IMG/VR virus record: IMGVR_UViG_3300021963_000023
Coordinates: 186,001 to 250,000 of that record
Reading direction: 5' to 3' (one strand)
Length of the DNA stretch: 64,000 nucleotides
Part shown: positions 26,103-46,448 of the stretch, piece after piece
Position numbering within the stretch: position 1 is the first letter of the stretch
How the letters are laid out: the number at the start of each line of letters is the position of its first letter
Notes under the pieces: generated by a model
What the model was told of the DNA's origin: nothing
What the model saw: the letters and a program-made list of their open reading frames with translations, nothing else
Database searches by the model: none
Position numbers and translations under genes: made by a program

Positions 26103-26105
26103 GTT

Positions 26106-27460: not shown

Positions 27461-28188
27461 TAACAAATAACGATTACATAAAAAACAATATTACCAACAA
27501 CGGTGATCAACCAGTACCATATAGATGGACACATGGGGCTACCGATTTACATATGGGTGATGGTATTATTGTATATTCTATGATTCAACACATGAGAGCC
27601 AAAAATTGTGTATGTATTGGTTCTGGTGGTGGATTTATACCTAGAATAATGACACAGGCTAGAATCGACTTATATCACGCTAATATCTTTGAGGGTGATG
27701 ATAACCATAGTTGGGGTGATATTGGAGCTACATATGTTGTTGATGCATGTAATGGTATTGGAGGACCAAATGATTTAGATGATAAAAATTCCTTTTATAG
27801 AAAAAATTTTAATCCTAGGTTTATTAAAGAAACCTCGGAAGCTGCGTTTTATAATTTCTTTATTAGACAAGATATTAAAATAGATTTATTATTTATCGAC
27901 GGCGATCATTCATACGAGGGTGTTAAGAAGGATTTTGATCTTTATTCTCAAATATTATCACCCAAAGGTGTTATCATCTTACATGATACGGACGATGAAT
28001 ATGAAGAAACATTAATTGTTTCCGAAGACTCAAAAAAAGATCACCATAGATTTGATGGCCCAAGCAAACTGGTTAAAGAACTCCAAAAAAATTCTGACTG
28101 GAACTTGATTAATTTACATAATTTCCGTATATTAATGGATAAACCATCATCTAGTGGTATAACCATTATTAATAGGAAATATGATTAG
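27457..28188 (+). CDS. Class I SAM-dependent methyltransferase (Methyltransf_24-like)
   Basis: 'VCIGSGGGF' and 'IDLLFIDGDHSYEGVKKDF...GVIILHD'. Start moved to the ATG at 27457, which overlaps the upstream stop as ATGA. Confidence 0.8.
   Translation: MITNNDYIKNNITNNGDQPVPYRWTHGATDLHMGDGIIVYSMIQHMRAKNCVCIGSGGGFIPRIMTQARIDLYHANIFEGDDNHSWGDIGATYVVDACNGIGGPNDLDDKNSFYRKNFNPRFIKETSEAAFYNFFIRQDIKIDLLFIDGDHSYEGVKKDFDLYSQILSPKGVIILHDTDDEYEETLIVSEDSKKDHHRFDGPSKLVKELQKNSDWNLINLHNFRILMDKPSSSGITIINRKYD
28105..28133 (+). promoter_or_regulatory. Internal sigma70-like promoter TTGATT-N17-TATATT
   Basis: Exact 17-nt spacing, about 50 nt upstream of the 28181 start. Confidence 0.45.
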
Positions 28189-28963
28189 GCTTTTAACAGT
28201 TATTGCTGACGGAATTGAATTACTTCCACACTTCATAAAACACTATCGACAATATGTTGATGAAATCAATATTGCTGTTTATGAAACAGATGCACATCCA
28301 TTATTAGGTAATGAAATATCACAACTCATTGGAAATGAGGAGAATGTTAAGATAGTAAAGGTCATTAAAAACAAAACATATGATGTTGATAAGGCCACTC
28401 TATTATATAATTTTATAAAGTCACAAAAGCCAAATGATTGGTGGGTTATTGCTAACATTAATGAATTTCATTTATATCCACACGACAATCTCCGTTATAT
28501 GATTGATAATTGTGAAGAGAATGGTTATCAATTAGTTAGAGGTGGTGTAATAGATAGAATTTCCACAGATAGTCAATACTCACAAATTATTGAAGATCAA
28601 TTAATATTTGATCAATACCCAACAATGGGTTTTTTTGCACACCCGATGAATAAAAAAAACCCTAACAGAGTCTGCGTGATGAAAGGTCATATCGAATTAA
28701 CTCCTGGTCAACACTATGCCAAAATAGATGGTGAAACAACATGGAAGTGGCAAGGATGGGAACATCCATTAATAGCTAAAACATACACAGTTCAAGTACA
28801 TGATTTCAAGTTAGATTCTAAAACTACAGACCAATTAAGAAAAAATAAATTTAAAATAGATTTAAATAACCCAGATTTTATGATTCAGGGTAATGGAGAA
28901 ATACCTAAACATCGGGTTTATAGAAAATGGGATAAACTAATAAAAAAAATAACATCAATATGA
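28181..28963 (+). CDS. Glycosyltransferase family 2-like protein with degenerate DxD motif
   Basis: Paralogue of 31985-32824 ('LPHF.KHY', 'GG..DR', 'GQHYA', 'QVH.FK'), with WVIANINEF in place of WIVSDDDEL. Confidence 0.6.
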   Translation: MIRLLTVIADGIELLPHFIKHYRQYVDEINIAVYETDAHPLLGNEISQLIGNEENVKIVKVIKNKTYDVDKATLLYNFIKSQKPNDWWVIANINEFHLYPHDNLRYMIDNCEENGYQLVRGGVIDRISTDSQYSQIIEDQLIFDQYPTMGFFAHPMNKKNPNRVCVMKGHIELTPGQHYAKIDGETTWKWQGWEHPLIAKTYTVQVHDFKLDSKTTDQLRKNKFKIDLNNPDFMIQGNGEIPKHRVYRKWDKLIKKITSI

Positions 28964-29166
28964 GTACTAAAGCAGAAAAAGAACAAGAAGAATTGCTTTT
29001 GGAACAACGCAAAGTAAAAGCATTAGAAAAAATTGCAAATTCAATGGATGCCTTAACCGTTTGGTTTGAGGAGGTTGATAAACAAGAATGGAGTGATAGA
29101 ATTCAACATTACTTGGCTGAATGGCACAAATCAATACAACCTAAAGATCCAACAATAAATGGGTAA
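28960..29166 (+). CDS. Small hypothetical protein
   Basis: 68 aa, overlapping both neighbouring genes. Confidence 0.6.
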   Translation: MSTKAEKEQEELLLEQRKVKALEKIANSMDALTVWFEEVDKQEWSDRIQHYLAEWHKSIQPKDPTING

Positions 29167-30586
29167 ACATAAATTAGGTATCATTGTTCCGTATCGAAAT
29201 AGAGCAAATCAACTTGGTCTTTTTAAAAGAAGTATGTCACATTTTTTAAAAAAAGAACACATTGATCATGAGATCTTTATTATCGAACAAGATGGTGCAA
29301 AATTATTTAATAGAGGTATGATATTAAACATTGGTTTTAACTATGCGGTAAAGCGTGGTTGTGACTATGTTGCTTTTCATGATATTGACATGTTACCACT
29401 ATATGTAGATTATTCATATTCAGACGTTCCACTTCATTTAGCTACAGACTTCGAATTTGAAAAAGGGGAAAAAGAAAGAGAAATTTTTGAAGAATATTTT
29501 GGGGGTGTAACATTATTCCCGGTTGAAGCATTTAAAAAAATTAATGGTTACTCTAACAAATATTGGGGATGGGGTTATGAAGATACCGATTTATTATTAA
29601 GATGTAGAATTAATGATATTGAATTAAATACCCTAAAAATAAAGAACATGGGTAAAAACGGGAAGGCGTTAAAATTCAATGGAGTAAACACCTATGTTGA
29701 ATGTGAAAACACGATTGATTTAAATAATGATGCAACATTTTTTATTTCCTTTTGCCCAGAAAATATGATATTTGATCATAAAAAAGATAGTGATGAGTTT
29801 ACTGTCTTTAGCATACCTGGATGGGATTTTGCAATATCCTATAATTCTTTTTGTAGATATAATTTTTGTGCATTTGATAGTAAACATACTCCACATTTTG
29901 TTAATTCAGAAATTAAAACCAACTATAAAACAAACATGGTTGTTGTTTTTAATAGAGATGAAAAATTTATCAAGGTGTATCAAGACGGTGAGTTAATTGG
30001 AAAAACAGAATGTTTTAAAAGACTTTTATATTATAAAAAAGAACCAAAATTTTATCTAGGCGCCGGAAAGCCAGAAAGGGAAAAGATACCAAATCACTTT
30101 AAAGGAACAATAGATAGTTTCGCCTACTTCGATAAGATGTTGTCAGAAGAAGAAATTAAAGAAATATCTAATAATGAAACATTTTACTTGAATGAATCTT
30201 TTGGGGAATATAAATCTAAAAACGATCTTAAAATTTATTACGATGGTGATTTTATTGAAAATTATCAGTTAGTTGATTTAAGTAATAATGGTGTAAAAGG
30301 TAAAATATTTAATTGTGAAATAATAAAACAAAACTATCCAGAATATACCGAATTAAAAGTTCCGCATAGAAGAAGATCAAAATTTAAATCAATTAAACAT
30401 GAGGAAAATGGATTTCTGGGAAATAGATGGAAAGATGATAATACCAGATGGAATCAATTAAGATTTCATAATGAGGTTTCTTTAAATAATAATTTAATGA
30501 TTGATGATGGGGTATCAAGTGTGGAATTTGTTCAACACGCATTCATTAAAGACAATAATACGTATCAAGCAATAGTTGGAATATGA
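29159..30586 (+). CDS. GT7-like (beta-1,4-galactosyltransferase-type) glycosyltransferase with inserted LamG/ConA-like domain
   Basis: PYRNR, FNRG, FHDIDMLP, FGGV and NGYSNKYWGWGYEDTD motifs. The insert runs 'ALKFNG...FKGTIDSFAYFDKMLSEEEI...DLSNNG'. Confidence 0.8.
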   Translation: MGKHKLGIIVPYRNRANQLGLFKRSMSHFLKKEHIDHEIFIIEQDGAKLFNRGMILNIGFNYAVKRGCDYVAFHDIDMLPLYVDYSYSDVPLHLATDFEFEKGEKEREIFEEYFGGVTLFPVEAFKKINGYSNKYWGWGYEDTDLLLRCRINDIELNTLKIKNMGKNGKALKFNGVNTYVECENTIDLNNDATFFISFCPENMIFDHKKDSDEFTVFSIPGWDFAISYNSFCRYNFCAFDSKHTPHFVNSEIKTNYKTNMVVVFNRDEKFIKVYQDGELIGKTECFKRLLYYKKEPKFYLGAGKPEREKIPNHFKGTIDSFAYFDKMLSEEEIKEISNNETFYLNESFGEYKSKNDLKIYYDGDFIENYQLVDLSNNGVKGKIFNCEIIKQNYPEYTELKVPHRRRSKFKSIKHEENGFLGNRWKDDNTRWNQLRFHNEVSLNNNLMIDDGVSSVEFVQHAFIKDNNTYQAIVGI

Positions 30587-31992
30587 GTCATAAATTAGGT
30601 ATATGTATACCATATAGAAACAGAAAGGATCACATTGAAAGGTTAATACCTCATTTAACAAAACATTTAAATGAAAAAGGTATTGAACACGCATTTTATG
30701 TTGGGCATCAAATAGATGATAAACTTTTTAATCGAGGTGCAATGAAAAATATTGCAGCTCATTACGCATTTGAAGATGGTTGTGATTATGTGGCTTGGCA
30801 TGATGTCGATATGCTTGGGCACGAGGAATCTGATTATTCATATTCAGATGATACACCGATTCATATCTCAACAAAGTTATCAAAATACAACTATACCTTA
30901 GGTTATGATCAATACTTTGGTGGTGTGGTATTATTCACAAAAGAACAAGCATATAAAACTAACGGTTATTCAAATGAGTATTGGGATTGGGGTCAAGAAG
31001 ATGATGATTTATTTTGGAGATGTCATTTTGAAGGGATGACAACTGGTAGGGTTATAGACACTGAAAAAAACAAACTCATTGCAAATTTCAATGGTGATGA
31101 TTCTGCGATTTATATACCAACTAATCGTGAGATCAGTTCGTGCTTACACAATGATCATACAATAACATTAACCTTTAACGCTGAACAACAAGATGATAAA
31201 GTTCCCATTTTTAGAGTTGGTGATAAGAATAAAAAATTCATAGAATATCCAATATTAAGAAAAGACGGTAGTTGGACCTGGGGAGTTTCATTTAACAATT
31301 CTAGAGCAGTTACTATGTCGTTATTTGATAGAGATGGTTTAAATCATTATAACTGGGCTAAAAGATTTGAGGGTATGTGGACAAAGGTTACTTTTAGTTA
31401 TAGTAGTGAAGAAAAGAATGCATATTTTTATATTAATGATGAGTTGATTTCACAAATAAGTGGTATAAAACAAAACGCACCATTTCTTGTAAAGAATGAT
31501 CTTAAAACACACGATTCAATAAAGCCGTTTTTACTAGGATTTTGTTCACATGTAAACACCAGATTTAAAGGTAAAATATCTGATTTTAAAATTTATAATA
31601 AGTATTTTAGTGATATAAATCTAATATCACAAAATAAAGAAAATATGGTATTGGAAATGGATCTAACAAGTGATGGTATAATTAAACAAAACATAAACTT
31701 AACTAACGAAGACATTGAGATCTTTGAAAATGTTGTACCCTTTAGAAGAGAGGGTAGGTTTTATTGTTTACCACATGTTGATGAAGGATTTATTCATGGT
31801 AACTGGGCCAAAGGTGAAACAACAGCAAAAAATGAAAAACGCTTTGTTACAGAAATGCAACAAGGTAAATTAAACTATAAAGAAGACGGATTAAATAAAA
31901 TATTAGAAGTGTTAGAAATTGATAATGTTGATGAGACACTATACCCTAATACTAAATTTATAAATGTTAAAATGATTACCAACTATGCTTAA
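30583..31992 (+). CDS. GT7-like glycosyltransferase with inserted LamG/ConA-like domain
   Basis: PYRNR, FNRG, WHDVDML, FGGV and NGYSNEYWDWGQEDDD motifs. The insert runs 'NFNGDDS...W..VTFSY...FYIND...FKGKISDFKIYN'. Confidence 0.8.
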   Translation: MSHKLGICIPYRNRKDHIERLIPHLTKHLNEKGIEHAFYVGHQIDDKLFNRGAMKNIAAHYAFEDGCDYVAWHDVDMLGHEESDYSYSDDTPIHISTKLSKYNYTLGYDQYFGGVVLFTKEQAYKTNGYSNEYWDWGQEDDDLFWRCHFEGMTTGRVIDTEKNKLIANFNGDDSAIYIPTNREISSCLHNDHTITLTFNAEQQDDKVPIFRVGDKNKKFIEYPILRKDGSWTWGVSFNNSRAVTMSLFDRDGLNHYNWAKRFEGMWTKVTFSYSSEEKNAYFYINDELISQISGIKQNAPFLVKNDLKTHDSIKPFLLGFCSHVNTRFKGKISDFKIYNKYFSDINLISQNKENMVLEMDLTSDGIIKQNINLTNEDIEIFENVVPFRREGRFYCLPHVDEGFIHGNWAKGETTAKNEKRFVTEMQQGKLNYKEDGLNKILEVLEIDNVDETLYPNTKFINVKMITNYA

Positions 31993-32824
31993 CCTCGTAA
32001 CAGTAGTTGGAAGAAACACTCACATATTACCTCATATGCTAAAACACTATGAAGGTATGGTAGATAAGATATATGTTGGTGTTTATAGACAACACGAAAA
32101 CGATGGTATCTTAGAAGAAGTTAGAAATCTTGGTATTGAACCATTTATAGTTGTTACTGAACCAAAGTATAATTGGAATAAGGTAACTGAAATGTATAAT
32201 ACCATTAAGCGTACCAAACCTAATGAATGGTGGATCGTTTCAGATGATGATGAGTTACAAGTATACCCATATGATATCAGAGATATCATTAAAGAATGTG
32301 AAGAAAATAATTTTACATTTGTAACCGGTGGATTTTTAGATAGATTAGGGGAAGGTGGAACATTTCCTATTGTTGAAAGAGATAGTGATATACATAAGCT
32401 ATTCCCATATGCTGGATTTTTCAGATACCCAATGTCAAATGCGTGCCCGAATAAAGTCACACTAATGCTTGGTTCTCAAGATGTTACATCTGGCCAACAT
32501 TATGCTGATTTTGGTAATAATAAGAATAGTTGGGGTAGATGGCATAGAAAAAGAATGCCAATTGATATTGTTTTCACACAAGTACATCACTTTAAATGGG
32601 ATTCTACATGCAATACCAGAATTAAGGAGGTTGCGGATACTAGAATTGATTATACTTGGTTCTGGGAGTATGAAAAATTATATGAAGAGTTAGAAAAGAA
32701 CAAGTGGATTGTAGATATTAATAAACCTGAGTTTTTATTTGAAAAACTAGATAATTTTTCGTATATTAACTTTAATGACTATTCAAAATGGGATGTCTTA
32801 AGAGATAAAATTGTAACAATTTAG
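31985..32824 (+). CDS. Glycosyltransferase family 2-like protein
   Basis: 'LPHMLKHY', 'WWIVSDDDEL', 'GGFLDR', 'QVHHFKW'. Confidence 0.65.
   Translation: MLNLVTVVGRNTHILPHMLKHYEGMVDKIYVGVYRQHENDGILEEVRNLGIEPFIVVTEPKYNWNKVTEMYNTIKRTKPNEWWIVSDDDELQVYPYDIRDIIKECEENNFTFVTGGFLDRLGEGGTFPIVERDSDIHKLFPYAGFFRYPMSNACPNKVTLMLGSQDVTSGQHYADFGNNKNSWGRWHRKRMPIDIVFTQVHHFKWDSTCNTRIKEVADTRIDYTWFWEYEKLYEELEKNKWIVDINKPEFLFEKLDNFSYINFNDYSKWDVLRDKIVTI
32739..32767 (+). promoter_or_regulatory. Internal sigma70-like promoter TTGAAA-N17-TATATT
   Basis: 17-nt spacer, about 60 nt upstream of the first radical SAM gene. Confidence 0.45.
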
Positions 32825-32827
32825 ATA

Positions 32828-34186
32828 ATGAGCAAAAAAACACCAGTTAGTGATACTTTCTGTATTTTACCATGGACGCATTTAATGATACAACCAAATG
32901 GTAATATACAACCTTGTTGCATGACCCCACATGATATGCCAATCGGTAACACCAAAGAAGATACCTTAGAGGAAGTGTGGAACGGATTTGTTATGAAGAA
33001 CATTCGTAAAAAAATGTTAAAGGGAGAAAAACCTATGCTTTGTAATAGATGTTACATGATGGAAGATAACGGTGCGGTTAGTCCTAGAGTTAACATGACT
33101 GAAAAGTTTGGTGCTGATGTTGATAAAATGATTGCAAACACAAATAGAGAAACTGGCCACAATAATGATTTTTCTTTAAAGTATTGGGACTTTAGATTCT
33201 CTAACATTTGTAATTTTAAATGCAGAATGTGTGGAACGTTTGCTAGTAGTAAATGGGCGGATGATGAAATGGCTATTCATGGTCAATCCAATAATGGGTT
33301 AATGAATTTTAGAAGTGAATCCAGAGAAGATATCATGAACTATGTGGATAAATTTATTGGTGATGTCCAAGAGATTTATTTTGCTGGCGGTGAACCACTG
33401 ATCATGGATGAACATTATATTATTTTAGAAAAGTTAATTGCTGCAGGTAGAACAGATGTAATTTTAAGATATAATACAAACTTTAGTCACATACAATTTA
33501 AAAAATGGGATTTAAATAAACTATGGGAACCATTTATTAATTGTGCTAAAAATCCAAAGGGTAGAGTGCAATTATTTGCGTCGTTAGATGCAGTTGGGCC
33601 TGTTGCAGAATTAGCTAGACATGGCACTGTTTGGGAAAACGTCTATAAAAATATTGAAACCGCGCTCAAGTTGGGTGTTGAGGTTTTTGTTTCCCCAACA
33701 ATTAGTATACTAAACGTCTTTCATGTTACTGATTTATTTGATGCGATTGTTAAATTAGGAATCAAACCTTCATATATTATCTTCAATAATTTTTTAACAG
33801 ATCCACAATGTTATGATATAAGAATCTTACCTGAAGATCTAAAAGAAGAATTAATGAATAAGCTAGAATCATATCACAAGAACTTACCAGAAGGTGCATA
33901 CAAAAACGCTATTGGTTCAGCAATCGGTGCCTGGGTTCATTTTCTTTATTCTGAAATTAATATAGATTTATTACAATTACAAATCAGTAGAAGAGAACTA
34001 CTAAGAGTTACAACAATATTAGATGTTAGAAGAAATGAAAACTTCTTAGATGTTAATCCACAATATAAAGATTGGTTTAAAGAGGTTAGAGCAACGGTTA
34101 AAAACTATGAGACTGAAGAATTTTTCTTTAGAGATAGAAGTTTACCTGACCCACCTAATGAAATACCTAAAACAATCGAAAACTAA
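32828..34186 (+). CDS. Radical SAM enzyme with N-terminal twitch/SPASM-like domain (1 of 6)
   Basis: N-terminal C..PW.H...G...PCC...CxxC, then CNFKCRMC, FAGGEP and YNTN. Confidence 0.9.
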   Translation: MSKKTPVSDTFCILPWTHLMIQPNGNIQPCCMTPHDMPIGNTKEDTLEEVWNGFVMKNIRKKMLKGEKPMLCNRCYMMEDNGAVSPRVNMTEKFGADVDKMIANTNRETGHNNDFSLKYWDFRFSNICNFKCRMCGTFASSKWADDEMAIHGQSNNGLMNFRSESREDIMNYVDKFIGDVQEIYFAGGEPLIMDEHYIILEKLIAAGRTDVILRYNTNFSHIQFKKWDLNKLWEPFINCAKNPKGRVQLFASLDAVGPVAELARHGTVWENVYKNIETALKLGVEVFVSPTISILNVFHVTDLFDAIVKLGIKPSYIIFNNFLTDPQCYDIRILPEDLKEELMNKLESYHKNLPEGAYKNAIGSAIGAWVHFLYSEINIDLLQLQISRRELLRVTTILDVRRNENFLDVNPQYKDWFKEVRATVKNYETEEFFFRDRSLPDPPNEIPKTIEN

Positions 34187-34191
34187 AATTT

Positions 34192-35211
34192 ATGTTAGAT
34201 AAAAAAGATTTTGTTTGTTTACAACCATTTGAGTTCACCGAATTCTTTGATTACAAAACATATATGTGCTGTCCTAATTGGTTACCAGTTGATTTGGGTG
34301 ATCCAATTGATATTAAAAACACCTGGGTTTCTGATCTAGCAAATAAGGTTAGAGAAAGTATGATAGATGGTAGTTACAAATATTGTATTGAAGCTAGATG
34401 TCCTAAATTAACGGGGTTAAAAGAAGGTAAAAGCGAAGGCTTTATGCCAAAGGAAGAGTTCTTAAGAAAAATCGATCAGTTTAAAGATCCGGTACCCAAA
34501 AGTGTTAAATTTAATTTTGATCAAAGCTGTAATCTACAGTGCCCTAGTTGTCGTTTAGAAAAAATAAATTATGTTGGGGAAGAAAGAACAAGAACGGAAT
34601 TGATATTACAAAGTATTGAAGAACAATTGTCTGAGGGTCTTGAGCATATAGAATGTACCGGATCTGGTGATCCATTTTTTTCTAGAACATTTAAGAAGTG
34701 GTTAATGACATTTAAGCCCAGTATGTACCCTAATTTAAAAAGTATACACTTACATACCAACGGTACTCTTTGGAACGAATCTAACTGGTCTAAAATGACA
34801 AATGTGCATAGATTTATTAAGTCTGCTGAGATATCTGTTGATGCAGCAACAAAAGACACGTATGAAAATTATACAAGGTTAGGTGGCAAATGGGAAGACA
34901 TCCAAAACAATCTTAGGTTTATTGCAACATTACCCAATCTAGAATATGTTACCATGTCTTTTGTTGTTCAAAATTCAAATTATAAAGAAATGGAAATGTT
35001 CTATAAGATGTCAGAAGAAATATTTGATGACACACATATCAATTGGCAGATATTTTTTAATAGAGTTGTTAACTGGGGAACATTTAAAAGTGAAGAATTT
35101 AAAATTGTTGATGTTGGTAATCCAGAACATCCAAACTACAAAGAGATGATTGAAATATACCATAGACTACCTGTTTCTAATAATATTAGACATAATTTAA
35201 CAATAGAGTAA
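34192..35211 (+). CDS. Radical SAM enzyme with N-terminal twitch-like domain (2 of 6)
   Basis: CLQPF...MCCP...C....CP, then CNLQCPSC, GSGDPF, HTNG and SVDAA. Confidence 0.9.
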   Translation: MLDKKDFVCLQPFEFTEFFDYKTYMCCPNWLPVDLGDPIDIKNTWVSDLANKVRESMIDGSYKYCIEARCPKLTGLKEGKSEGFMPKEEFLRKIDQFKDPVPKSVKFNFDQSCNLQCPSCRLEKINYVGEERTRTELILQSIEEQLSEGLEHIECTGSGDPFFSRTFKKWLMTFKPSMYPNLKSIHLHTNGTLWNESNWSKMTNVHRFIKSAEISVDAATKDTYENYTRLGGKWEDIQNNLRFIATLPNLEYVTMSFVVQNSNYKEMEMFYKMSEEIFDDTHINWQIFFNRVVNWGTFKSEEFKIVDVGNPEHPNYKEMIEIYHRLPVSNNIRHNLTIE

Positions 35212-36485
35212 TGATTGAATGTAAAAATTTAACAAATGGTTTTAGAATCGCCACCTCTGGAGGTTATTTTGCGTGTTGTCACACGTTTAATAACCCATTT
35301 AAAGATGAAAATGGTGATGAGATGGTAGCTAGCACACATTCAATTGAAGAAGGGTTAAAAAGCCCAACTAGAATGAAAATGTTAGATGATTTTAAAAATG
35401 ATATTAGGCATCCGGCTTGTGTTGTTTGTTGGTCAGCAGAAGATGCTGGATTTGTTAGTAAAAGACAAAGAGATAATGAGACATATAAAAAAATACTTGA
35501 ATTTTACCCAGAAAGAAAAGATTCTGATTTATTTTTTTTAGAATTAAATCTTGGTAACACATGTAATCTTGCATGTAGAATATGTCATATATCTGCATCA
35601 TCAAAATGGAAAGAATTTCATCATGTAACAGAAACCGATGTAACTGAAGAAAGATTAGACTTTTATGTAGATAAATATTCAAAAGCATTTAGAGACAATA
35701 GTATTGTTTGGGCTGAATTAATGAGTATACTTCCTGAAGTTAGAAGTTTAGACATATATGGGGGTGAACCAATGTTGATGAAAAAGCAATGGGAGATTTT
35801 AGAAATGTCCGTTAAGTTGGGGTATTCTAAAAAACAACAAATGAGTTTTAACACAAACGGTACAATTATAAATGAGAAGTATATTGATATTTTAAGTTCA
35901 TTTGCACAGTGTAGAATTGGGTTTAGTATTGATGGCGTTGGTAAAAGATTCAACTATTTAAGACATTTTGGGAAATGGGATGTGGTTAGTGAAAATATTA
36001 ATATTTGGCAAAATAAAGTTAAATTAATTCCAGACAATAAAATAATCTTTGAGGTATGTTGTACTATATCAATGCTAAATGTTCTTCATGTTTTTGAGAT
36101 GGTTGATTTTGTTATTGAGAACCATTTAAAATTAATGATAGCTTTTGTTTACAACCCCAGACACTTACACATTGGATATATGCCAGAGAAGTGTAAAAAA
36201 CTTATTTTAGAAAAACTTGAAGCCGAGTATGATCTTAGGATTACACAAATTAATGATGATACAACAATAGATGATTCTGAAAAACAATATAGATGGGATG
36301 TAATGAGGCAAGCACATAAAGTTATAAACACATTAAAATTACCTGTTGAGGGTACACAAGGTGATTGGCAAGAATTTAAGAGACAAACATTAGCATTAGA
36401 CATTTTAAGGAATGAATCTTTTGCTGATACATTTGCGGATTTAGAAGAAATATATAATATTACAAAAACAACAAAATTAATATAA
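35211..36485 (+). CDS. Radical SAM enzyme with N-terminal twitch-like domain (3 of 6)
   Basis: C...G..ACC...CVVCW, then CNLACRIC, YGGEP, NTNGT and SIDG. Ends TKLI. Confidence 0.9.
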   Translation: MIECKNLTNGFRIATSGGYFACCHTFNNPFKDENGDEMVASTHSIEEGLKSPTRMKMLDDFKNDIRHPACVVCWSAEDAGFVSKRQRDNETYKKILEFYPERKDSDLFFLELNLGNTCNLACRICHISASSKWKEFHHVTETDVTEERLDFYVDKYSKAFRDNSIVWAELMSILPEVRSLDIYGGEPMLMKKQWEILEMSVKLGYSKKQQMSFNTNGTIINEKYIDILSSFAQCRIGFSIDGVGKRFNYLRHFGKWDVVSENINIWQNKVKLIPDNKIIFEVCCTISMLNVLHVFEMVDFVIENHLKLMIAFVYNPRHLHIGYMPEKCKKLILEKLEAEYDLRITQINDDTTIDDSEKQYRWDVMRQAHKVINTLKLPVEGTQGDWQEFKRQTLALDILRNESFADTFADLEEIYNITKTTKLI

Positions 36486-36486
36486 G

Positions 36487-37959
36487 ATGTCAGAAAGACT
36501 ATTAAAATTTAAAGAAGAAAAATTAGATTCAGTTAGCTGTAGCTTCTGTCCTGCTAAGTGGTATAATGCAACTATCGATTTAGGTAGTGGTTATAGTAGG
36601 TCATGTTTCCTACCATTACCACACCCAATTGATTTAGAAGAAATTAAAACAAACCCATCAGCATTACATAACACTTCACATAAAAAGAAAATGAGAAGAA
36701 TGATGTTATCAGGTATTAGACCTGCTGAATGTTCTTATTGTTGGAAGGTTGATGACATTGGTAGAAACAATATTTCAGATAGAGTTTATAGAAGCATGGA
36801 ATACAAACATGAAGATATTGATATCTTAAAAGATTTACCTTGGGATGCTGATGTTAATTTGAGAACCGTAGAACTATCATTTGATAGAAGTTGTAATTTT
36901 GCTTGTTCATATTGTAACCCAAGCTATTCAACAACCTGGGGTAAAGATATTGATGAACATGGACCATATCAAAAATTTAAAACATTAACTGCTGGTGCAT
37001 ATCAACAAAACGGTTCATGGGCAGATCCTGAAAATAAATTTATTGGTGATAACCCATATGTTACAGCATTTTTAGAATGGTGGCCAGACTTATCAAAAGA
37101 TTTACAAACATTAAGAATCACTGGTGGTGAACCATCAACTAGTCATAACTTTTGGAAATTCTTAGATAAAATTAAAGATCAATCATATCCTAATTTAAAT
37201 CTATCTATAAATTCTAATTTAGGTGTTAAAGATGAATTGATTGATAAATTAATTAGAACAACCCACGAATTAGATATTCAATCATATGACATCTACACAA
37301 GTTGTGAATCATATGGTGATCACGCAGAATATCTTAGAGATGGTTTAATTTATTCTAAATGGAGAGGTAATGTTGTTAGAATGATTGAAGAGGCTAACAT
37401 TAGACAAATTGTAATCATGATGACTGTGACTGGTTTATCATTAATGTCAATGACTGAGTTCATGGATGATATGTTGGAGTTAAAGAAAAAGTATGGTCCT
37501 AATAAACCAACAATGGATCTTAACTTCTTAAGATGGCCAGGATTTATGTCACCATTGAATTTACCAGATAATATTAAGATTGAAGCTAAAAATAAAATTC
37601 AAGTTTGGTTAGATAAGAATAGAGATTCTGGTTTATTATTAGAACATGAGATAACACAAACACAAAGAGTAATTGATTACATTGATGTTGTTGATCAAGG
37701 ACACGCTAGAGCTGAGTTCGATAAAGATAAACACTTCCATGACTTCAAAAGTTTTTATGTACAATATGATATTAGAAGAAACAAAGACTTTAGAAAAACA
37801 TTCCCAATGTTAGTTGATTGGTACGATTCTATTCAAATAGACAACTATATACCAGATGTTAAATTGTCTGGTGGTGGTATGGAAGGTTGGGAGCTTGGTG
37901 AATATAAACCAGACATCATGGCTAGAAATGAAGCCAGACAAAAAAATGATTTAAACTAA
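36487..37959 (+). CDS. Radical SAM enzyme with N-terminal twitch-like domain (4 of 6)
   Basis: FCPAKW...SC...CSYCW, then CNFACSYC and TGGEP. Confidence 0.9.
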   Translation: MSERLLKFKEEKLDSVSCSFCPAKWYNATIDLGSGYSRSCFLPLPHPIDLEEIKTNPSALHNTSHKKKMRRMMLSGIRPAECSYCWKVDDIGRNNISDRVYRSMEYKHEDIDILKDLPWDADVNLRTVELSFDRSCNFACSYCNPSYSTTWGKDIDEHGPYQKFKTLTAGAYQQNGSWADPENKFIGDNPYVTAFLEWWPDLSKDLQTLRITGGEPSTSHNFWKFLDKIKDQSYPNLNLSINSNLGVKDELIDKLIRTTHELDIQSYDIYTSCESYGDHAEYLRDGLIYSKWRGNVVRMIEEANIRQIVIMMTVTGLSLMSMTEFMDDMLELKKKYGPNKPTMDLNFLRWPGFMSPLNLPDNIKIEAKNKIQVWLDKNRDSGLLLEHEITQTQRVIDYIDVVDQGHARAEFDKDKHFHDFKSFYVQYDIRRNKDFRKTFPMLVDWYDSIQIDNYIPDVKLSGGGMEGWELGEYKPDIMARNEARQKNDLN

Positions 37960-39258
37960 ATGGAAAAAAATTATAATAAAGAAACCTTTTGTGTTGCTCC
38001 ATGGATTGCATCGCATTTAAGTACATTTGGAAATGTTGTTCCTTGTTGTTTATATAAACAAGAACGAGTTTTCGGAGAACTTAAACAAGGTGTTCCATTA
38101 AATGAAATGTATAATTCTGATGTTGCAAAGGATATTAGAAAAAGATTGTGGAATGGTGAGAAGATAAATGAGTGTCAAATTTGCTGGTATAGAGAAGAGG
38201 TTTCAAAAGGGAAGAGCCAAGTTGATAGTTACAGATTTAATTTAAACAAACAGTTTGAAGATGAAATAGAAAACATTGTGGATAACACAAATGAAGATTT
38301 TTCATTAAAAATTATACAATTTAAACACTTAGATCTACGTTTTGATAATAAATGTAATTTAAAATGTAGGATTTGTAATCCCGGTTTTTCATCATCATTA
38401 TATAAAGAGTATAAAGCGTTAGGCTTCAATAATTTTAAAGATTATGGTCAACCATATAGTATGTCGGTTGATGATGATGAGTTTAATTTTATTTTAAGCC
38501 AATTAAAGCATGTTAAGTCATTATTTTTTGCTGGTGGCGAACCATTAACACAAGATAAACATTATCAAATATTACAATACTGCATAGACAATGACTATGC
38601 TAAAAATATAACAGTGTGGGTTACAACCAATTTCACAAAATTATATTATAAAGATTACAATATAATTGAGATGTGGAAGAAGTTCAAAGCTGTTGAGATA
38701 ACAGCGAGTATAGATGGGTTTGAAGAGAGAGGTCAATACCTTAGAAGCGGATCCAAATGGTCTGAAATAGTTGAGAATAGAAAAACACTTTTGAGAGAAC
38801 TACCAGATACTTTTTTTGGAATTGTACCAACAATTAACATAATGAATAGCTATACCATAATTGATTTATATAAAAATTGGATAGAAAATGGCTACTTACT
38901 TCCCGGTAAAATCCATATTAATTTATTGACACATCCAGAACACCTTCAGATAAAAATGCTACCTGAAAGACATAAAGAGGTTCTTAGAATATTGTATAAT
39001 AACCTTATAATTTGGATAAAAAATAACATAGCGGATAACAGTGAAGCACAACGAGACATAGGACAATTTGAATTTGTAATAGACTTGTTAAATCAAGAAA
39101 GAGATGAAGAAATGTTCCAAAAGTTTTTAAAAATGACAGACATGGTTGACACATTCAGAGGTGATGATTTCTTTTCTGTGTTTACTGAGTTTAGAGATTT
39201 TATTGATCCAAATGTTATCATTGAATTACCCAAAGATGATAATGTAAAATTATTATAA
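37960..39258 (+). CDS. Radical SAM enzyme with N-terminal twitch-like domain (5 of 6)
   Basis: FCVAPW..H...PCC...CQICW, then CNLKCRIC, AGGEP and SIDG. Ends VKLL. Confidence 0.9.
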   Translation: MEKNYNKETFCVAPWIASHLSTFGNVVPCCLYKQERVFGELKQGVPLNEMYNSDVAKDIRKRLWNGEKINECQICWYREEVSKGKSQVDSYRFNLNKQFEDEIENIVDNTNEDFSLKIIQFKHLDLRFDNKCNLKCRICNPGFSSSLYKEYKALGFNNFKDYGQPYSMSVDDDEFNFILSQLKHVKSLFFAGGEPLTQDKHYQILQYCIDNDYAKNITVWVTTNFTKLYYKDYNIIEMWKKFKAVEITASIDGFEERGQYLRSGSKWSEIVENRKTLLRELPDTFFGIVPTINIMNSYTIIDLYKNWIENGYLLPGKIHINLLTHPEHLQIKMLPERHKEVLRILYNNLIIWIKNNIADNSEAQRDIGQFEFVIDLLNQERDEEMFQKFLKMTDMVDTFRGDDFFSVFTEFRDFIDPNVIIELPKDDNVKLL

Positions 39259-40481
39259 TGAATTCCATCTCAGAAAAATTTTGCTATTTACCCTTTGGTT
39301 CAATTTATGTTGGGGCATCTGGTACACTATCACCTTGTTGTATTGCTTCTCCATTTAAAGAGAATATTCATTTCAAGGATTTCAATTCTGTTGATGAAGC
39401 AATTAATAGCGAACCATATAAACGTATTAGAAAAGAGATGTTATTTAATATTGCGCCATCTGAATGTGCGGAATGTTTTGTATATAAAAATAGACACAAA
39501 GAACATAGTAATATTGAGTTTAGAGAAGAAATAGCGGACCCATCATTATATAATGAAGACTATAGTGTAAACAAAATTGTTTACACAGATTTGAGACTTT
39601 CTAATCATTGTAATTTTAAATGTAGAATGTGTTTTCATGGATCATCATCAACCTGGTTTGAGTATTGGGGATATGTTCAAAATCAACCAGAATATGATAC
39701 CATCAATACCAAGTACTTAACAGCGGGTGACGACGCTCTTGATAAGTTTTCAGAAGAAAATATTGATTCTATTCGTAAAGTTTATTTAGCTGGTGGTGAA
39801 CCATTTATAACGCCAACAACATTTACCTTGTTAGATAGATTCAGTGACGAACAGGCTAAAAATGTTTATATATTAATTAATACAAACTTATCCACACTAA
39901 CATACAAAGGTATTGACATACTTGATAAACTTAAACGTTTTAAAACTGTAGACATCTCTTGTTCATGTGATGGGTATGGTAAAATTGGTGAATATCAAAG
40001 ACCAGGATTTAATTCTGAAAAATTCTTTAAAAATCTGGAAACGCTAATTAAGTTTAAAGAAACCAACGACAATTTCAAAGTTTCTATTGATTATACTATT
40101 TCAACAATAAACATGTACCATTCTTTTGATTTCATAAAGTTTGTTGAAGAAAATTACCTCCATTCAGATCACATTAGGTTTCATACTGTGACTCAACCTT
40201 TTTATTTTGCACCTGGAATTTGTAAGGGTGGCATGAAACAAGCGTTAATAGAACTTTATGAAAACAACATAAACAATTTAACATCACTTTGTAGATATAC
40301 GTTGATTGAATTTGTTAAATATTTAAGAAACACTGAGGATGAGGAAGTTTATAGCCACCTATTAGATAAGAAGAAATATGTTACTATTTCACTACCGGAA
40401 ACCTTAAGGAGATTTGACGAAATTAATAAAACCGATTATAAGGAAATATGCCCATGGTTAGGTGATATTTTTATTGATTAA
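39258..40481 (+). CDS. Radical SAM enzyme with N-terminal twitch-like domain (6 of 6)
   Basis: FCYLPF...PCC...CAEC, then CNFKCRMC, AGGEP and SCDG. Confidence 0.9.
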   Translation: MNSISEKFCYLPFGSIYVGASGTLSPCCIASPFKENIHFKDFNSVDEAINSEPYKRIRKEMLFNIAPSECAECFVYKNRHKEHSNIEFREEIADPSLYNEDYSVNKIVYTDLRLSNHCNFKCRMCFHGSSSTWFEYWGYVQNQPEYDTINTKYLTAGDDALDKFSEENIDSIRKVYLAGGEPFITPTTFTLLDRFSDEQAKNVYILINTNLSTLTYKGIDILDKLKRFKTVDISCSCDGYGKIGEYQRPGFNSEKFFKNLETLIKFKETNDNFKVSIDYTISTINMYHSFDFIKFVEENYLHSDHIRFHTVTQPFYFAPGICKGGMKQALIELYENNINNLTSLCRYTLIEFVKYLRNTEDEEVYSHLLDKKKYVTISLPETLRRFDEINKTDYKEICPWLGDIFID

Positions 40482-40484
40482 AAA

Positions 40485-40513
40485 TTGACTTTTCAACTTG
40501 TTTTAGCTATATT
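40485..40513 (+). promoter_or_regulatory. sigma70-like promoter TTGACT-N17-TATATT
   Basis: -35 at 40485-40490 and -10 at 40508-40513. The ATG at 40520 lies about at the expected +1, so the mRNA may be leaderless. Confidence 0.7.
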
Positions 40514-40519
40514 ATCATT

Positions 40520-40954
40520 ATGATATACTGGTTAACTGGACAACCCGGAGCAGGTAAAACAACCCTAGCAAAATACTTGGTGGAATATTTCCCTCAAAAC
40601 GAGGTTACTCACATTGATGGGGATGATCTAAGAGACATCTTTAATAATAAAGACTATTCCATTACAGGAAGAAGACTAAACATCCAAAGAGCACAATACA
40701 TTGCGCAATTCATGCATAGTAAAGGACACAATGTCATTGTATCCTTAGTTTCACCGTATAGAGATCAGAGAGAGGCATTTAAGTTCAGCACATCGGTTGT
40801 TGAGATTTATGTTCACACCACAGAAGATCGAGGTAGAAATCAATTCCACGTTGAGGAATATGAACCACCATTAGAAAATTTTATAGATATAGACACAACA
40901 ATAAAGAACGAGACAGATTCATATTATGAACTGTTAAAAAAATTATCATTATGA
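40520..40954 (+). CDS. cysC: Adenylyl-sulfate (APS) kinase
   Basis: 'WLTGQPGAGKTT', 'IDGDDLR', 'SLVSPYRDQR', 'YEPP'. Confidence 0.85.
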   Translation: MIYWLTGQPGAGKTTLAKYLVEYFPQNEVTHIDGDDLRDIFNNKDYSITGRRLNIQRAQYIAQFMHSKGHNVIVSLVSPYRDQREAFKFSTSVVEIYVHTTEDRGRNQFHVEEYEPPLENFIDIDTTIKNETDSYYELLKKLSL

Positions 40955-41331
40955 GTAAAAAATACGCAATGTATGTTGGTAGATGGCAAAATTGGCATAA
41001 GGGCCACGAATGGCTTATTAACCAACAATTAGATAAAGGAAAAGATGTGTGGGTTGCAATTAGGAACGTGCCAACGGATGAAAATAACCCTAAGACCGCA
41101 CAGCAAGTTATGATGGATCTAAGTGAAGAACCTTTCTTTAGAGAAAATTCACAAAGAATTAACATATCAATTATTCCTGATATTGAGAGCATTAATTATG
41201 GTAGAGGGGTTGGTTATGATGTAATATACCACGAACCTCCTGCGGATGTGGCGGTTATTAGTGGAACGGCAATTAGAACCGGACATATGACACCCGATGG
41301 TACAATAACATATGACCAAACTAAAGGATAA
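40951..41331 (+). CDS. HxGH nucleotidyltransferase (cytidylyltransferase-like); candidate minimal ATP sulfurylase
   Basis: 'GRWQNWHKGH', 'NP' and 'ISGTAIR' motifs; coupled to cysC. Confidence 0.7.
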   Translation: MSKKYAMYVGRWQNWHKGHEWLINQQLDKGKDVWVAIRNVPTDENNPKTAQQVMMDLSEEPFFRENSQRINISIIPDIESINYGRGVGYDVIYHEPPADVAVISGTAIRTGHMTPDGTITYDQTKG

Positions 41332-41540
41332 TGATAGTAGAAAAGAAAAGACATATAGCTAAAACCATCTCATATCGAATTGTAAGTACCTTAATTGGAT
41401 TCTTATTAATGTGGATGATTAGTGGGTCGATTAAAGTTGGTGCGGCTTTTGGTGTTGCAGAATTGATTTACAAGCCAATACAGTATTATCTACATGAAAG
41501 AATATGGTATAGATGGATTAAGTATGGTCTTAAAAAATAA
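41331..41540 (+). CDS. DUF2061-like small membrane protein
   Basis: 'RHIAKTISYRIVST...YYLHERIW' pattern, a family often found next to sulfate-activation genes. Confidence 0.7.
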   Translation: MIVEKKRHIAKTISYRIVSTLIGFLLMWMISGSIKVGAAFGVAELIYKPIQYYLHERIWYRWIKYGLKK

Positions 41541-41549
41541 TAAAACGCT

Positions 41550-43203: not shown

Positions 43204-43204
43204 T

Positions 43205-44565: not shown

Positions 44566-44566
44566 C

Positions 44567-44954: not shown

Positions 44955-46448
44955 ATGAAAGCAACAATAATTGGTAGTGATTTTTTACAAAAAGATGGTT
45001 CGGTCAAATTTTTGGAAATAAATACAAACACCACAATCTATAATGAGGGCGCGGATTTGTTAGAATATGACGCGTTATTTAATATGTTAAATGTTAATAA
45101 TATTACAGAATTTCATTATATATGGACGGAAAATGATGCATATAGCCCATTAAATCAGGCACACAGATTTGTGCAAATATTAAAAACAAAATGTGAGGAA
45201 AATAATATATCATATACTGATCATATTGTGCCAATGAATTCGGTAACTGTACCTTTTATTGAAGACGCTAATAATAAATTTATCTTAAGACAGTCCTTTG
45301 ATACTACCGCATTGGTAGATGAAACATATTGTGCTGATAAATTTGAATTTTTTAATTTAATGAAAGATTCACAATATATCCCCAAAACACATTACACATC
45401 GGATACATTAAATTTAAATACTTTGGATGAGGTGAATTATACTGATACTGAAAACCCAAACGTATTAATAAAATATCGTTATCCACAATATGATAAATCA
45501 TTATACCCGGCCCTATATGCAGTTTCTAATAATACCGAATTATCTGATACAATAAATTCTGCTGAAAGTAATTTTTTAGTTCAAGAATTTATATTTTCAG
45601 AAGAAAATTTGGTGGAGGGTAGATATTCGATTATAAGAGGGATTGATATCATATATGGGTCTAATTTAGATGTTATTAATATGGGTGGCTATAGTCAATC
45701 CACGATAATACCGGTTTTATTTGCAACTACAGAACTTATTCCCAATACAAAAAAATTAAACCAAAAAAGTAGATACAAATATATTACAAAAGATGTTGGT
45801 GGATCAAAAGGAAAAGATTATCATACCGATGATGATTCAAATATTTTAAACTATGATGGCTCATTAACAAATGTTAGTACAATACAATTGGGTGATTATG
45901 TTCGTTCTATTAATTTTGTGGATTCAAATGAAAATGAAGCTAAAGCTTTTACTAATGAAATTTTAACATACGGTTGGGATAGTACATTACAGCAATCAAA
46001 TGACACATTAGTACCATTACAATCTGAATTAGTGGGTATGATATCATCATCAGTTGAAATGGTAATGATAAAAATAACATTAGAAGATGGTAGAACTTGG
46101 TCAGATACTCCTGCGTGTGTATATTATATTGAAGAAAAAGATTCAACAGCAACTAGGTTTGAAAAGGTAAATAGTCTATATGTTGGTGATAAATTAGTTA
46201 TAACCGATTCAAATACTAATCAATTAACAACCATAACAATTACGGGATTAGAAATGATATATGAAACCAAAACAATTTACACATTAGATTTTGCACCTTC
46301 TGATTTATTCTTAGTTGATATTGGCGATTTTCAATTTAGTGTAATGCATAATGGTTGCTGGTGTAGTTATTCATATTGTGGTAACTGGTGTTATTCATCA
46401 TGGTGTCCAACCTGTCAATATGGCGGGTTTCAAAAATTTCAACCCTAA
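44955..46448 (+). CDS. Circularly permuted ATP-grasp domain + Hint (intein-like) domain + C-terminal 31-aa Cys-rich peptide
   Basis: ATP-grasp motifs: 'GSDF...DGSVKFLEINTN' at the N-terminus, then 'ADKFEF...IPKT', 'VLIK' and 'LVQEFI'. Hint blocks: 'ILNYDGS...IQLGDYV', 'ITLEDGR...T', 'LYVGDKL' and 'IYTLDF..SDLFLV...VMHN'. These are followed by GCWCSYSYCGNWCYSSWCPTCQYGGFQKFQP. Confidence 0.75.
   Translation: MKATIIGSDFLQKDGSVKFLEINTNTTIYNEGADLLEYDALFNMLNVNNITEFHYIWTENDAYSPLNQAHRFVQILKTKCEENNISYTDHIVPMNSVTVPFIEDANNKFILRQSFDTTALVDETYCADKFEFFNLMKDSQYIPKTHYTSDTLNLNTLDEVNYTDTENPNVLIKYRYPQYDKSLYPALYAVSNNTELSDTINSAESNFLVQEFIFSEENLVEGRYSIIRGIDIIYGSNLDVINMGGYSQSTIIPVLFATTELIPNTKKLNQKSRYKYITKDVGGSKGKDYHTDDDSNILNYDGSLTNVSTIQLGDYVRSINFVDSNENEAKAFTNEILTYGWDSTLQQSNDTLVPLQSELVGMISSSVEMVMIKITLEDGRTWSDTPACVYYIEEKDSTATRFEKVNSLYVGDKLVITDSNTNQLTTITITGLEMIYETKTIYTLDFAPSDLFLVDIGDFQFSVMHNGCWCSYSYCGNWCYSSWCPTCQYGGFQKFQP

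What the first reader, a model, noticed from the sequence alone, without database searches (positions are those of the whole stretch)
32828..40481. Six tandem, divergent radical SAM enzymes with N-terminal twitch domains and no adjacent classic precursor
Seen: each has an intact CxxxCxxC and an N-terminal Cys cluster, the reverse of the usual C-terminal SPASM/twitch order. They are contiguous, share an upstream promoter-like site at 32739, and are strongly diverged from each other. Established: SPASM/twitch enzymes often modify peptides (Cys thioethers, Trp/Tyr cross-links) or sugars. Inference: the only Cys/Trp/Tyr-dense short peptide nearby is the 6-Cys tail of 44955, and two of the six enzymes carry the LI/LL tag. 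The preceding glycosyltransferases point to sugar tailoring as the alternative.
Basis: partly seen in the sequence, partly recalled or inferred. Interest (0 to 1): 0.62.

Follow-up and report, generated by a model that had tools for sequence, protein, structure and literature searches.

The report
Phage radical SAM array beside glycosyltransferases
A large T4-like phage carries six anciently diverged radical SAM enzymes of a named but uncharacterised family.

Summary
The six genes are real, intact and tightly packed. Each has CX3CX2C preceded by five N-terminal Cys, and they share 15-32% identity. Five pass the cut-off of NCBIfam NF033640 (N_Twi_rSAM). The second, W2, scores 67 bits against a cut-off of 170 and is a short, divergent offshoot.

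Tandem arrays are normal for this family:
- 4-8 copies in most of the 80 best viral loci.
- 12-32 matches per genome in five Bdellovibrionales genomes.

The window belongs to a 251-kb T4-like phage record. Its six paralogs fall into six separate clades, each with orthologues in other phages.

In relatives, the constant unit is methyltransferase, GT2-like, a 68-aa ORF, two beta4GalT-like GT7+LamG genes, then a W4-type radical SAM. Array size varies from 1 to 8. Carbamoyltransferases, other glycosyltransferases and Wzt-type exporters recur nearby.

The 44955 gene dissociates from the arrays in both directions. Only the W2 type recurs beside it.

Best reading: radical tailoring of a glycan or glycoconjugate. 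No activity has been tested. This is a new member of a known, uncharacterised family.

The parts
27439..28188 (+). SAM-dependent methyltransferase, the first gene of the conserved cassette
   Evidence: Pfam Methyltransf_24, 49.7 bits. It is the first gene of the cassette in G015-G020.
28181..28963 (+). GT2-like protein (weak family match)
   Evidence: Pfam Glyco_tranf_2_4 at 17 bits, below cut-off. Homologues in L001-L003, L011 and L083, and in the cassettes of G018 and G020.
28960..29166 (+). Conserved 68-aa ORF rich in Glu and Lys, with no Cys. Function unknown: possibly an adaptor or an acceptor.
   Evidence: ORF listed. There are 10 homologues in 1-3 copies at the same position in relatives, with invariant W44, R47 and Y51. 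No Pfam match.
29159..30586 (+). GT7 (beta-1,4-galactosyltransferase-like) catalytic domain fused to a LamG/ConA-like lectin domain
   Evidence: Pfam Glyco_transf_7N, 7C and Laminin_G_3. PDB beta4GalT7 at E=1e-28 over residues 3-164.
30583..31992 (+). Second GT7+LamG glycosyltransferase
   Evidence: Pfam Glyco_transf_7C 73 bits, 7N 55 bits, Laminin_G_3.
31985..32824 (+). GT2-like protein. It contains the promoter-like string at 32739.
   Evidence: Pfam Glyco_tranf_2_4 at 26.7 bits, cut-off 27.5. 67% identical in L001.
32828..34186 (+). W1, an N-terminal-twitch radical SAM (452 aa)
   Evidence: NF033640 at 377 bits. AF2 model with pLDDT 80.5. Forms its own clade with L083, L081 and L001-3.
34192..35211 (+). 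W2, a short divergent radical SAM (339 aa) that aligns to only the first 310 of the family model's 398 positions, so the C-terminal part is unmatched
   Evidence: NF033640 at 67 bits, below cut-off. Sits on a long-branch clade together with the solo copies found next to 44955 homologues.
35211..36485 (+). W3, an N-terminal-twitch radical SAM (424 aa) ending in KLI
   Evidence: NF033640 at 267 bits. Clade placement.
36487..37959 (+). W4, an N-terminal-twitch radical SAM (490 aa). This is the subfamily always kept beside the GT cassette.
   Evidence: NF033640 at 300 bits. 93% identical in L083 and 45-48% in distant arrays. The only type constant across G015-G020.
37960..39258 (+). W5, an N-terminal-twitch radical SAM (432 aa) ending in KLL
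   Evidence: NF033640 at 358 bits. Clade placement.
39258..40481 (+). W6, an N-terminal-twitch radical SAM (407 aa)
   Evidence: NF033640 at 264 bits. Clade placement.
40520..41331 (+). APS-kinase-like P-loop protein (40520-40954) and a kinase-like protein (40951-41331), at the end of the packed block
   Evidence: Pfam APS_kinase at 63 bits. phrog_10255 kinase. The same pair follows the arrays or GTs in L081, L083 and L171-L173.
44955..46448 (+). 497-aa protein ending in VMHN followed by a six-Cys tail. It was considered as a substrate and is not shown to belong to the array. At most it is a candidate partner of the W2 type.
   Evidence: Sequence. The tail is conserved in 117 of 119 homologues. 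Dissociation from arrays. A Hint fold was not verified.

Best explanation
The genes from 27439 to 41331 form one operon-like block in the tail-fibre region of a T4-like phage of at least 251 kb. The block builds and decorates a glycan or glycoconjugate. Two beta4GalT-like GT7+LamG enzymes and two GT2-like proteins would add sugars. The methyltransferase and the kinase-like proteins would decorate them. The five N-terminal-twitch radical SAM enzymes would each use 5'-deoxyadenosyl radical chemistry, with one auxiliary Fe-S cluster, to perform a different redox-type edit on a sugar residue, such as oxidation, epimerisation, dehydration or decarboxylation.

What is shown:
- The domain order and the Cys ligands.
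- Family membership of five of the six genes.
- The ancient split into subfamilies.
- The conserved linkage to glycosyltransferases.

What is inferred:
- The substrate class.
- The type of reaction.
- Whether the glycan ends up on the virion fibres or on the host surface.

W2 is a separate, shorter lineage and may have a different partner.
For: - Packing: junctions from 27439 to 41331 range from -8 to +5 nt, with one 38-nt gap.
- Real glycosyltransferases: the GT7 domain matches beta4GalT7 at E=1e-28 (Pfam).
- Conserved cassette: five related phage records keep methyltransferase, GT2-like, small ORF(s), GT7+LamG x2-3, then W4-type radical SAM x1-2. Other subfamilies come and go.
- Viral context: 65 of 80 array-bearing viral loci carry a glyco-related family within 10 kb. 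These are carbamoyltransferase (34 loci), a putative NDP-sugar-transferase-like family c2 (53 loci, a lead), GT7 and GT2-like.
- Independent bacterial contexts: a GT2, GT2/GT7C, radical SAM x2 operon in a Bdellovibrionia chromosome; Wzt-type ABC ATPase in 8 loci, carbamoyltransferase in 5 and GT2 in 8 of 79 loci; a GT2-containing acyl-carrier/ketosynthase cluster in Paenibacillus.
- A relative lacks radical SAM genes in the 19.5 kb upstream of its 44955 homologue. At the equivalent place it has NDP-sugar epimerase/dehydratase and RmlC-like genes next to the same GT, carbamoyltransferase and kinase set.
- Deep subfamilies: the six paralogs lie in six supported clades that are shared with distant arrays. 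This fits distinct steps rather than redundancy.
- From established knowledge: solved or characterised twitch enzymes such as BtrN, HygY, BlsE and MoaA act on sugars or nucleotides. BlsE is the top fold match (Z 11.2).
Against: - No activity was tested.
- The fold matches are tied within about 1 Z between sugar enzymes (BlsE, MoaA) and peptide maturases (SkfB, CteB, anSME, SuiB).
- The window contains no NDP-sugar synthesis genes.
- Some Bdellovibrionales arrays sit among housekeeping genes with no glycosyltransferase nearby.
- Neighbouring enzymes in the window could equally modify a protein: P4H-like 2OG oxygenases and a SET domain protein.
- The conserved 68-aa ORF inside the cassette could be a peptide substrate.
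- The c2 glycosyltransferase assignment rests only on language-model features. Pfam and the PDB sequence search found nothing for it.
Confidence: 0.5

Rival explanations
1. The radical SAM enzymes modify a protein directly. The target would be a virion fibre protein or the conserved 68-aa protein encoded inside the cassette, and the reaction could be epimerisation, C-C or C-S cross-linking, or side-chain oxidation. The glycosyltransferases would act on the same protein.
For: - The SPASM/twitch clade is rich in peptide maturases, and weak NCBIfam cross-hits go to PapB, CbpB, DynA, YhhB and the SCIFF maturase.
- The arrays lie next to tail-fibre genes.
- The GT-plus-lectin architecture recalls protein O-glycosyltransferases (my knowledge).
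- The 68-aa ORF occurs in 1-3 tandem copies, with a conserved N-terminal part and a variable tail.
- P4H-like oxygenases and a SET domain protein lie nearby.
Against: - No RRE or PqqD-like domain was found by Pfam.
- Bacterial arrays have no conserved small ORF or fibre gene.
- The 68-aa family is not detectably related to the 100-aa c3 family of the commoner cassette (hhalign probability 4.9%).
- The Paenibacillus context is an acyl-carrier/ketosynthase cluster.
Confidence: 0.2
2. The enzymes mature the six-Cys C-terminal tail of the 44955 protein, for example through thioether links, after Hint-type self-cleavage.
For: - The tail pattern (CWC, then YCG, C, C, and finally CxxC) after VMHN is conserved in 117 of 119 homologues.
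- A solo W2-type radical SAM lies 0.25-4 kb downstream of this gene in 20 of 61 loci. Among the 25 loci with at least 5.5 kb on both sides, 10 have it.
- W3, W5 and the solo W2-type proteins share the C-terminal K-x-L-I ending that marks this island.
Against: - None of 80 array loci has a homologue of the gene, and two complete array-bearing phages lack it.
- 13 of 25 well-flanked loci with the gene have no radical SAM nearby.
- In complete relatives G015 and G017, the matches over the family cut-off lie about 60 kb or more from the gene, and no W2-type copy was found.
- The co-location is confined to one syntenic phage lineage, so it may be shared ancestry only.
- The Hint fold is unverified: Pfam and PDB searches are negative and the AF2 model has pLDDT 45.
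- The protein is far more conserved (55-98% identity) than the enzymes.
Confidence: 0.08
3. The enzymes act on nucleotides or nucleic acid. They would be viperin-like or DNA-hypermodification enzymes, serving counter-defence or host takeover.
For: - Weak matches to prokaryotic viperin models: NF038283 up to 40.5 bits and pVip up to 47.7 bits.
- Viperin is among the fold matches.
- Expansion in phages and in predatory bacteria would fit a conflict role.
Against: - The viperin matches cover only the shared radical SAM core, about positions 6-150 of 257, and lie far below the cut-off of 180.
- No nucleotide-metabolism genes are adjacent.
- The conserved partners are glycosyltransferases.
Confidence: 0.05

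Closest known systems
NCBIfam NF033640, N_Twi_rSAM (twitch domain-containing radical SAM protein)
   Same: The Cys-rich twitch-like domain comes first, then the CX3CX2C core, then a helical C-terminal region. Five of the six genes score 264-377 bits against a cut-off of 170.
   Different: The family has a name but no function that I could find. W2 scores only 67 bits and aligns to only the first 310 of the model's 398 positions.
Twitch radical SAM enzymes that act on sugars or nucleotides: BtrN, HygY, BlsE, MoaA
   Same: They have one auxiliary Fe-S domain plus a partial TIM-barrel core. BlsE (Z 11.2) and MoaA (Z 10.4) are among the top fold matches. The gene context here is carbohydrate-related.
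   Different: In those enzymes the twitch domain follows the core. Here it precedes it. Sequence identity is 16-18%. No shared substrate-binding residues were tested.
SPASM peptide maturases (AlbA, CteB/SCIFF maturase, SuiB, anSME)
   Same: Pfam SPASM matches. Fold Z scores are 9.6-10.9, tied with the sugar enzymes.
   Different: Those enzymes have a C-terminal SPASM domain with two auxiliary clusters, usually an N-terminal peptide-recognition domain, and an adjacent precursor gene. None of these was found here.
Radical SAM cassettes in the host recognition cluster of pelagimyophages (PMC7029224)
   Same: They lie in the hypervariable tail-fibre region of T4-like marine phages, which also contains glycosyltransferases. 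The cassettes come and go between close relatives.
   Different: That paper only mentions them. I did not test whether those genes belong to NF033640.
Five-gene radical SAM modules with an amidinotransferase in Campylobacter phages CP220 and CPt10 (PMC2853527)
   Same: They are interchangeable multi-radical-SAM modules in T4-like phages. An amidinotransferase-like gene also flanks 17 of the 80 viral arrays.
   Different: The CP220 genes are not N_Twi. The best NF033640 score is 31 bits, and only over the core.

Membership tests
NF033640 N_Twi_rSAM | Whole-protein HMM score of at least 170 bits | tested here: met
   W1 377, W3 267, W4 300, W5 358 and W6 264 bits. W2, at 67 bits, does not meet it.
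NF033640 N_Twi_rSAM | Cys-rich twitch-like domain N-terminal to the CX3CX2C radical SAM motif | tested here: met
   All six have five Cys before the motif. Pfam SPASM lies at residues 9-76 in W1, W5 and W6.
NF033640 N_Twi_rSAM | The N-terminal Cys actually bind an auxiliary Fe-S cluster | not testable with these tools
   This needs reconstitution with spectroscopy, or a solved structure.
SPASM/RiPP peptide maturase | C-terminal SPASM domain with about seven Cys for two auxiliary clusters | tested here: not met
   Only 1-5 scattered Cys follow the motif, and there is no C-terminal SPASM match.
SPASM/RiPP peptide maturase | Adjacent short precursor gene and a peptide-recognition (RRE) domain | tested here: inconclusive
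   No RRE family was found by Pfam, and the packed block has no Cys-rich short ORF. A conserved 68-aa ORF does exist at 28960-29166. The 44955 tail dissociates from the arrays.
Prokaryotic viperin | Full-length match to NF038283 (cut-off 180 bits), including the C-terminal NTP-binding part | tested here: not met
   The best score is 40.5 bits. The pVip matches cover only about positions 6-150 of 257.
Cobalamin-dependent radical SAM methylase | N-terminal B12-binding domain | tested here: not met
   None of the six has a B12-binding match.
GT7 glycosyltransferases (for the neighbours at 29159 and 30583) | Glyco_transf_7N and 7C domains homologous to beta4GalT | tested here: met
   Pfam scores of 74 and 65 bits for one gene, 55 and 73 bits for the other. 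Beta4GalT7 at E=1e-28.

The most novel reading that the evidence does not exclude
The window joins two systems.

The first is a combinatorial radical glycan-editing array tied to the GT cassette.

The second is a phage-encoded peptide-maturation island. In it, the 44955 protein would cut itself after VMHN and release a six-Cys peptide. That peptide would be matured by the W2-type radical SAM and by the many neighbouring enzymes (2OG oxygenases, sulfotransferase-like and SET proteins, and a halogenase in relatives). These enzymes carry a common C-terminal ending, of which K-[ST]-L-I is the commonest form, and it would serve as a docking tag.
Probability: 0.1. Interest if true: 0.85.

Novelty: new member of a known kind. 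Interest (0 to 1): 0.5.

Why it matters
N_Twi radical SAM proteins form a large family: more than 5,000 metagenomic relatives of W1 alone. The family has a curated name but no known reaction. In the genomes sampled here it is concentrated in large aquatic phages and in Bdellovibrionota.

The analysis points to a clear experiment. A W4-type enzyme always travels with a beta4GalT-like cassette, and the arrays are built from anciently separate subfamilies. Expressing that minimal cassette and looking for a sugar-based substrate is therefore the obvious first test. If the enzymes edit glycans on tail fibres or on the host surface, the arrays would be a new source of variation in phage host recognition and a new set of radical carbohydrate chemistries.

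Tried and rejected
- Promoter at 32739: not above chance, and inside a CDS.
- Near-identity DNA search of the phage collection: no match. A protein search found only 22-26% identical genes in KVP40-like Vibrio phages and RsoM2USA.
- Fold searches: Foldseek TM-scores were about 0.3, and VIA Z scores of 9-11 were tied across BlsE, SkfB, MoaA, CteB and anSME. This gives no functional discrimination.
- Protein Atlas for W4: only viral radical SAM clusters.
- Literature: no paper on an N-terminal twitch domain.
- CP220 modules: a different family.
- Apparent split radical SAM genes (130 + 310 aa) in the commoner cassette: an artefact of single-linkage clustering, with no HMM hit.
- Homology between the 68-aa ORF and the 100-aa c3 family: rejected.
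- PDB profile searches for neighbour families c2 and c5: nothing found.
- Fold of the 44955 protein: pLDDT 45, so it was not searched. Pfam and PDB sequence searches were also negative.
- Whole-record search of the ENA, JGI and NCBI-assembly contigs L172, L173, L081 and L083: not held.
- Two exact look-ups failed, probably because the called start codons differ.
- Not used: the search of protein representatives, read laying and the look-up of sequencing runs. Only genetic code 11 was used.
Full report
**What is there**

The window is bases 186001-250000 of a 251,149-bp IMG/VR virus record, which CheckV estimates to be 75% complete. The record encodes a T4-type gp23 capsid protein. Its nearest relatives in the phage collection are only 29-42% identical: an uncultured 484-kb phage, Rhodothermus phage RM378, Microcystis phage Mel-JY01 and Flavobacterium phage immuto. 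Tail-fibre genes lie upstream in the window.

Six intact + strand ORFs occupy 32828-40481. I call them W1 to W6. Each has a single CX3CX2C motif preceded by exactly five Cys. Pfam puts a SPASM match at residues 9-76 of W1, W5 and W6, ahead of the Radical_SAM match. Identity to W1 is 15-32%.

**Family**

NCBIfam already has a model for this architecture: NF033640, N_Twi_rSAM. W1, W3, W4, W5 and W6 score 264-377 bits against a cut-off of 170. W2 scores 67 bits and aligns to only the first 310 of the model's 398 positions.

I found no paper that assigns a reaction to this family. An AlphaFold model of W1 (pLDDT 80.5) matches the SPASM/twitch clade in general. BlsE scores Z 11.2, SkfB 10.9, MoaA 10.4, and CteB and anSME 10.0, so all are tied. 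The fold does not tell sugar enzymes from peptide enzymes.

**Arrays are the rule for this family**

- A pattern scan of IMG/VR returned more than 586 related stretches. In the best 80 loci, most hold 4-8 HMM-verified copies in tandem.
- W1 alone has more than 5,000 metagenomic relatives at E below 1e-10.
- Among cellular genomes the matches are dominated by Bdellovibrionota. Five Bdellovibrionales genomes hold 12-32 matches each, with runs of up to seven in tandem. None of 14 control genomes has a match over the cut-off.

**The six are old paralogs**

In a FastTree of 121 members, the six window proteins fall in six separately supported clades, each with orthologues from other phages. The distant, commoner type of array draws on the same subfamilies. 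A 227-kb relative, L083, has the same six genes in the same order at 64-93% identity, and W4 is the most conserved.

**What travels with them**

From 27439 to 41331 the genes overlap by 1-8 nt or are 0-5 nt apart, with one 38-nt gap. In order, the block contains:
- a methyltransferase;
- a GT2-like protein;
- two GT7+LamG proteins, whose catalytic domain matches beta4GalT7 at E=1e-28;
- a second GT2-like protein;
- W1 to W6;
- an APS-kinase-like protein and a kinase-like protein.

Five related phage records keep the same core: methyltransferase, GT2-like, small ORF(s), GT7+LamG x2-3, then W4-type radical SAM x1-2. The other subfamilies are present or absent. Across relatives the array size ranges from 1 to 8.

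In the commoner cassette the arrays sit after tail-fibre genes and two copies of a family that the protein Atlas groups with NDP-sugar transferases (a lead only). They sit before a carbamoyltransferase. Altogether 65 of 80 loci have at least one such glyco-related family.

Bacterial contexts add independent cases:
- a GT2, GT2/GT7C, radical SAM x2 operon;
- Wzt-type ATPases, carbamoyltransferases and GT2 genes in 19 of 79 loci;
- a GT2-containing acyl-carrier/ketosynthase cluster in a Paenibacillus isolate.

Some Bdellovibrionales arrays have no such neighbour.

**The 44955 hypothesis**

The 497-aa protein ends in VMHN followed by a six-Cys tail. The tail is conserved in 117 of 119 homologues. 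The protein as a whole is highly conserved, with the 120 best listed homologues at 63-98% identity and the viral loci down to 46%. A Hint fold could not be verified.

The gene and the arrays dissociate in both directions:
- None of 80 array loci has a homologue.
- Two complete array-bearing phages of 337 and 347 kb lack it. A positive control confirmed that the search works.
- Of 61 loci with the gene, only three near-identical relatives of the window have the array within 10 kb.
- In complete relatives G015 and G017, the matches over the family cut-off lie about 60 kb or more from the gene.
- One 278-kb relative has, in the 19.5 kb upstream of the gene, no radical SAM. It has NDP-sugar epimerase/dehydratase genes, an RmlC-like gene, a carbamoyltransferase and GT genes instead.

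There is one exception. A solo W2-type gene, 36-41% identical to W2, lies 0.25-4 kb downstream of the 44955 homologue in 20 of the 61 loci. Among the 25 loci with at least 5.5 kb on both sides, 10 have it and 13 have no radical SAM. All of these loci belong to one syntenic lineage, so this may be shared ancestry only.

**Interpretation**

The best-supported reading is that the five N_Twi enzymes tailor a glycan or glycoconjugate made by the adjacent glycosyltransferases, with each subfamily doing a different step. I give this about 0.5. The substrate class, the reaction type and the final location of the product are all inferred.

The rivals are:
- Direct modification of a fibre protein or of the 68-aa protein (0.2).
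- Maturation of the six-Cys tail (0.08, essentially for W2 only).
- Nucleotide chemistry (0.05). The viperin matches cover only the shared core.

**Comparison with what is known**

This is a new set of members of a named but uncharacterised family. Radical SAM cassettes in the tail-fibre region of pelagimyophages have been mentioned in the literature (PMC7029224). Multi-radical-SAM modules are also known in Campylobacter phages (PMC2853527), but those belong to a different family.

As far as the searched library shows, four points are new:
- the subfamily structure of the arrays;
- the constant pairing of W4 with the GT7 cassette;
- the large expansion in Bdellovibrionota;
- the separate behaviour of W2.

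No reads tools were used. I took no contig for human. Only code 11 was used. The large representative search was not run.

Noticed in passing
window 35211-48706, and loci L175-L235: A C-terminal ending, most often K-[TS]-L-I, marks the gene island around 44955.
- In the 61 related loci, 309 of 1118 complete ORFs (27.6%) end in LI and 50% end in [LIV][LIV].
- By comparison, 0.2% end in LI in distant array loci and in bacterial loci.
- The commonest last four residues are KTLI, KSLI and KSII.
- Leu and Ile codons vary, and two tagged genes in the window are followed by 77-86 nt spacers. It therefore looks like a peptide-level tag.
- Tagged proteins include 2OG oxygenases, sulfotransferase-like and SET proteins, W3, W5 and the solo W2-type radical SAMs.
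   Followed up: partly
window 44955-46448: This 497-aa protein is very conserved: more than 648 homologues, the 120 best listed all 360-501 aa long. It ends in VMHN, then CWC..YCG..C..C..CxxC. The N-terminus contains FLEINTN, which I read as ATP-grasp-like. It has no Pfam or PDB sequence match, and the AF2 model has pLDDT 45.
   Followed up: partly
window 28960-29166: A conserved 68-aa ORF, rich in Glu and Lys and without Cys, fills the apparent 195-nt gap in the GT cassette. Relatives have 1-3 tandem copies with a conserved N-terminal part and two types of variable tail.
   Followed up: partly
G010-G014 (Bdellovibrionales genomes), e.g. G010:C1:792852-803016: Each genome has 12-32 matches to N_Twi_rSAM, most of them over the family cut-off. 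One 1.9-Mb genome has seven in tandem. Some arrays are flanked only by housekeeping genes.
   Followed up: partly
window 41550-43843 and 46647-47234: Five P4H-like 2OG-Fe(II) oxygenase paralogs. With them are a sulfotransferase-like gene (43843), a SET-domain gene (47734) and an APS-kinase-like gene (40520). Relatives add a Trp-halogenase-like gene and GT25.
   Followed up: no
window 58062-59063 and 60063-60752: A seventh radical SAM protein (333 aa, with no N-terminal twitch domain) and a second Methyltransf_24 methyltransferase lie in another packed block. DUF401, a transporter-like protein, is at 61794.
   Followed up: no
window 53119-56506: Three tandem paralogs (368-379 aa) of phrog_1417, function unknown, lie after a 1438-aa protein.
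   Followed up: no
window 25515-26690: Two tandem 195-aa proteins with weak, below-cut-off C1q-domain matches lie just upstream of the cassette. They are possibly fibre tips.
   Followed up: no
window 60799-60889: ARAGORN calls a 91-nt tRNA-Arg (CCG) that overlaps the start of the ORF at 60805-61806.
   Followed up: no
L173 1497-7624 (278-kb ENA contig): A related phage carries a reverse-strand NDP-sugar cassette next to the same GT/kinase island. It comprises three epimerase/dehydratase genes, an RmlC-like isomerase and split TPP-enzyme genes.
   Followed up: no
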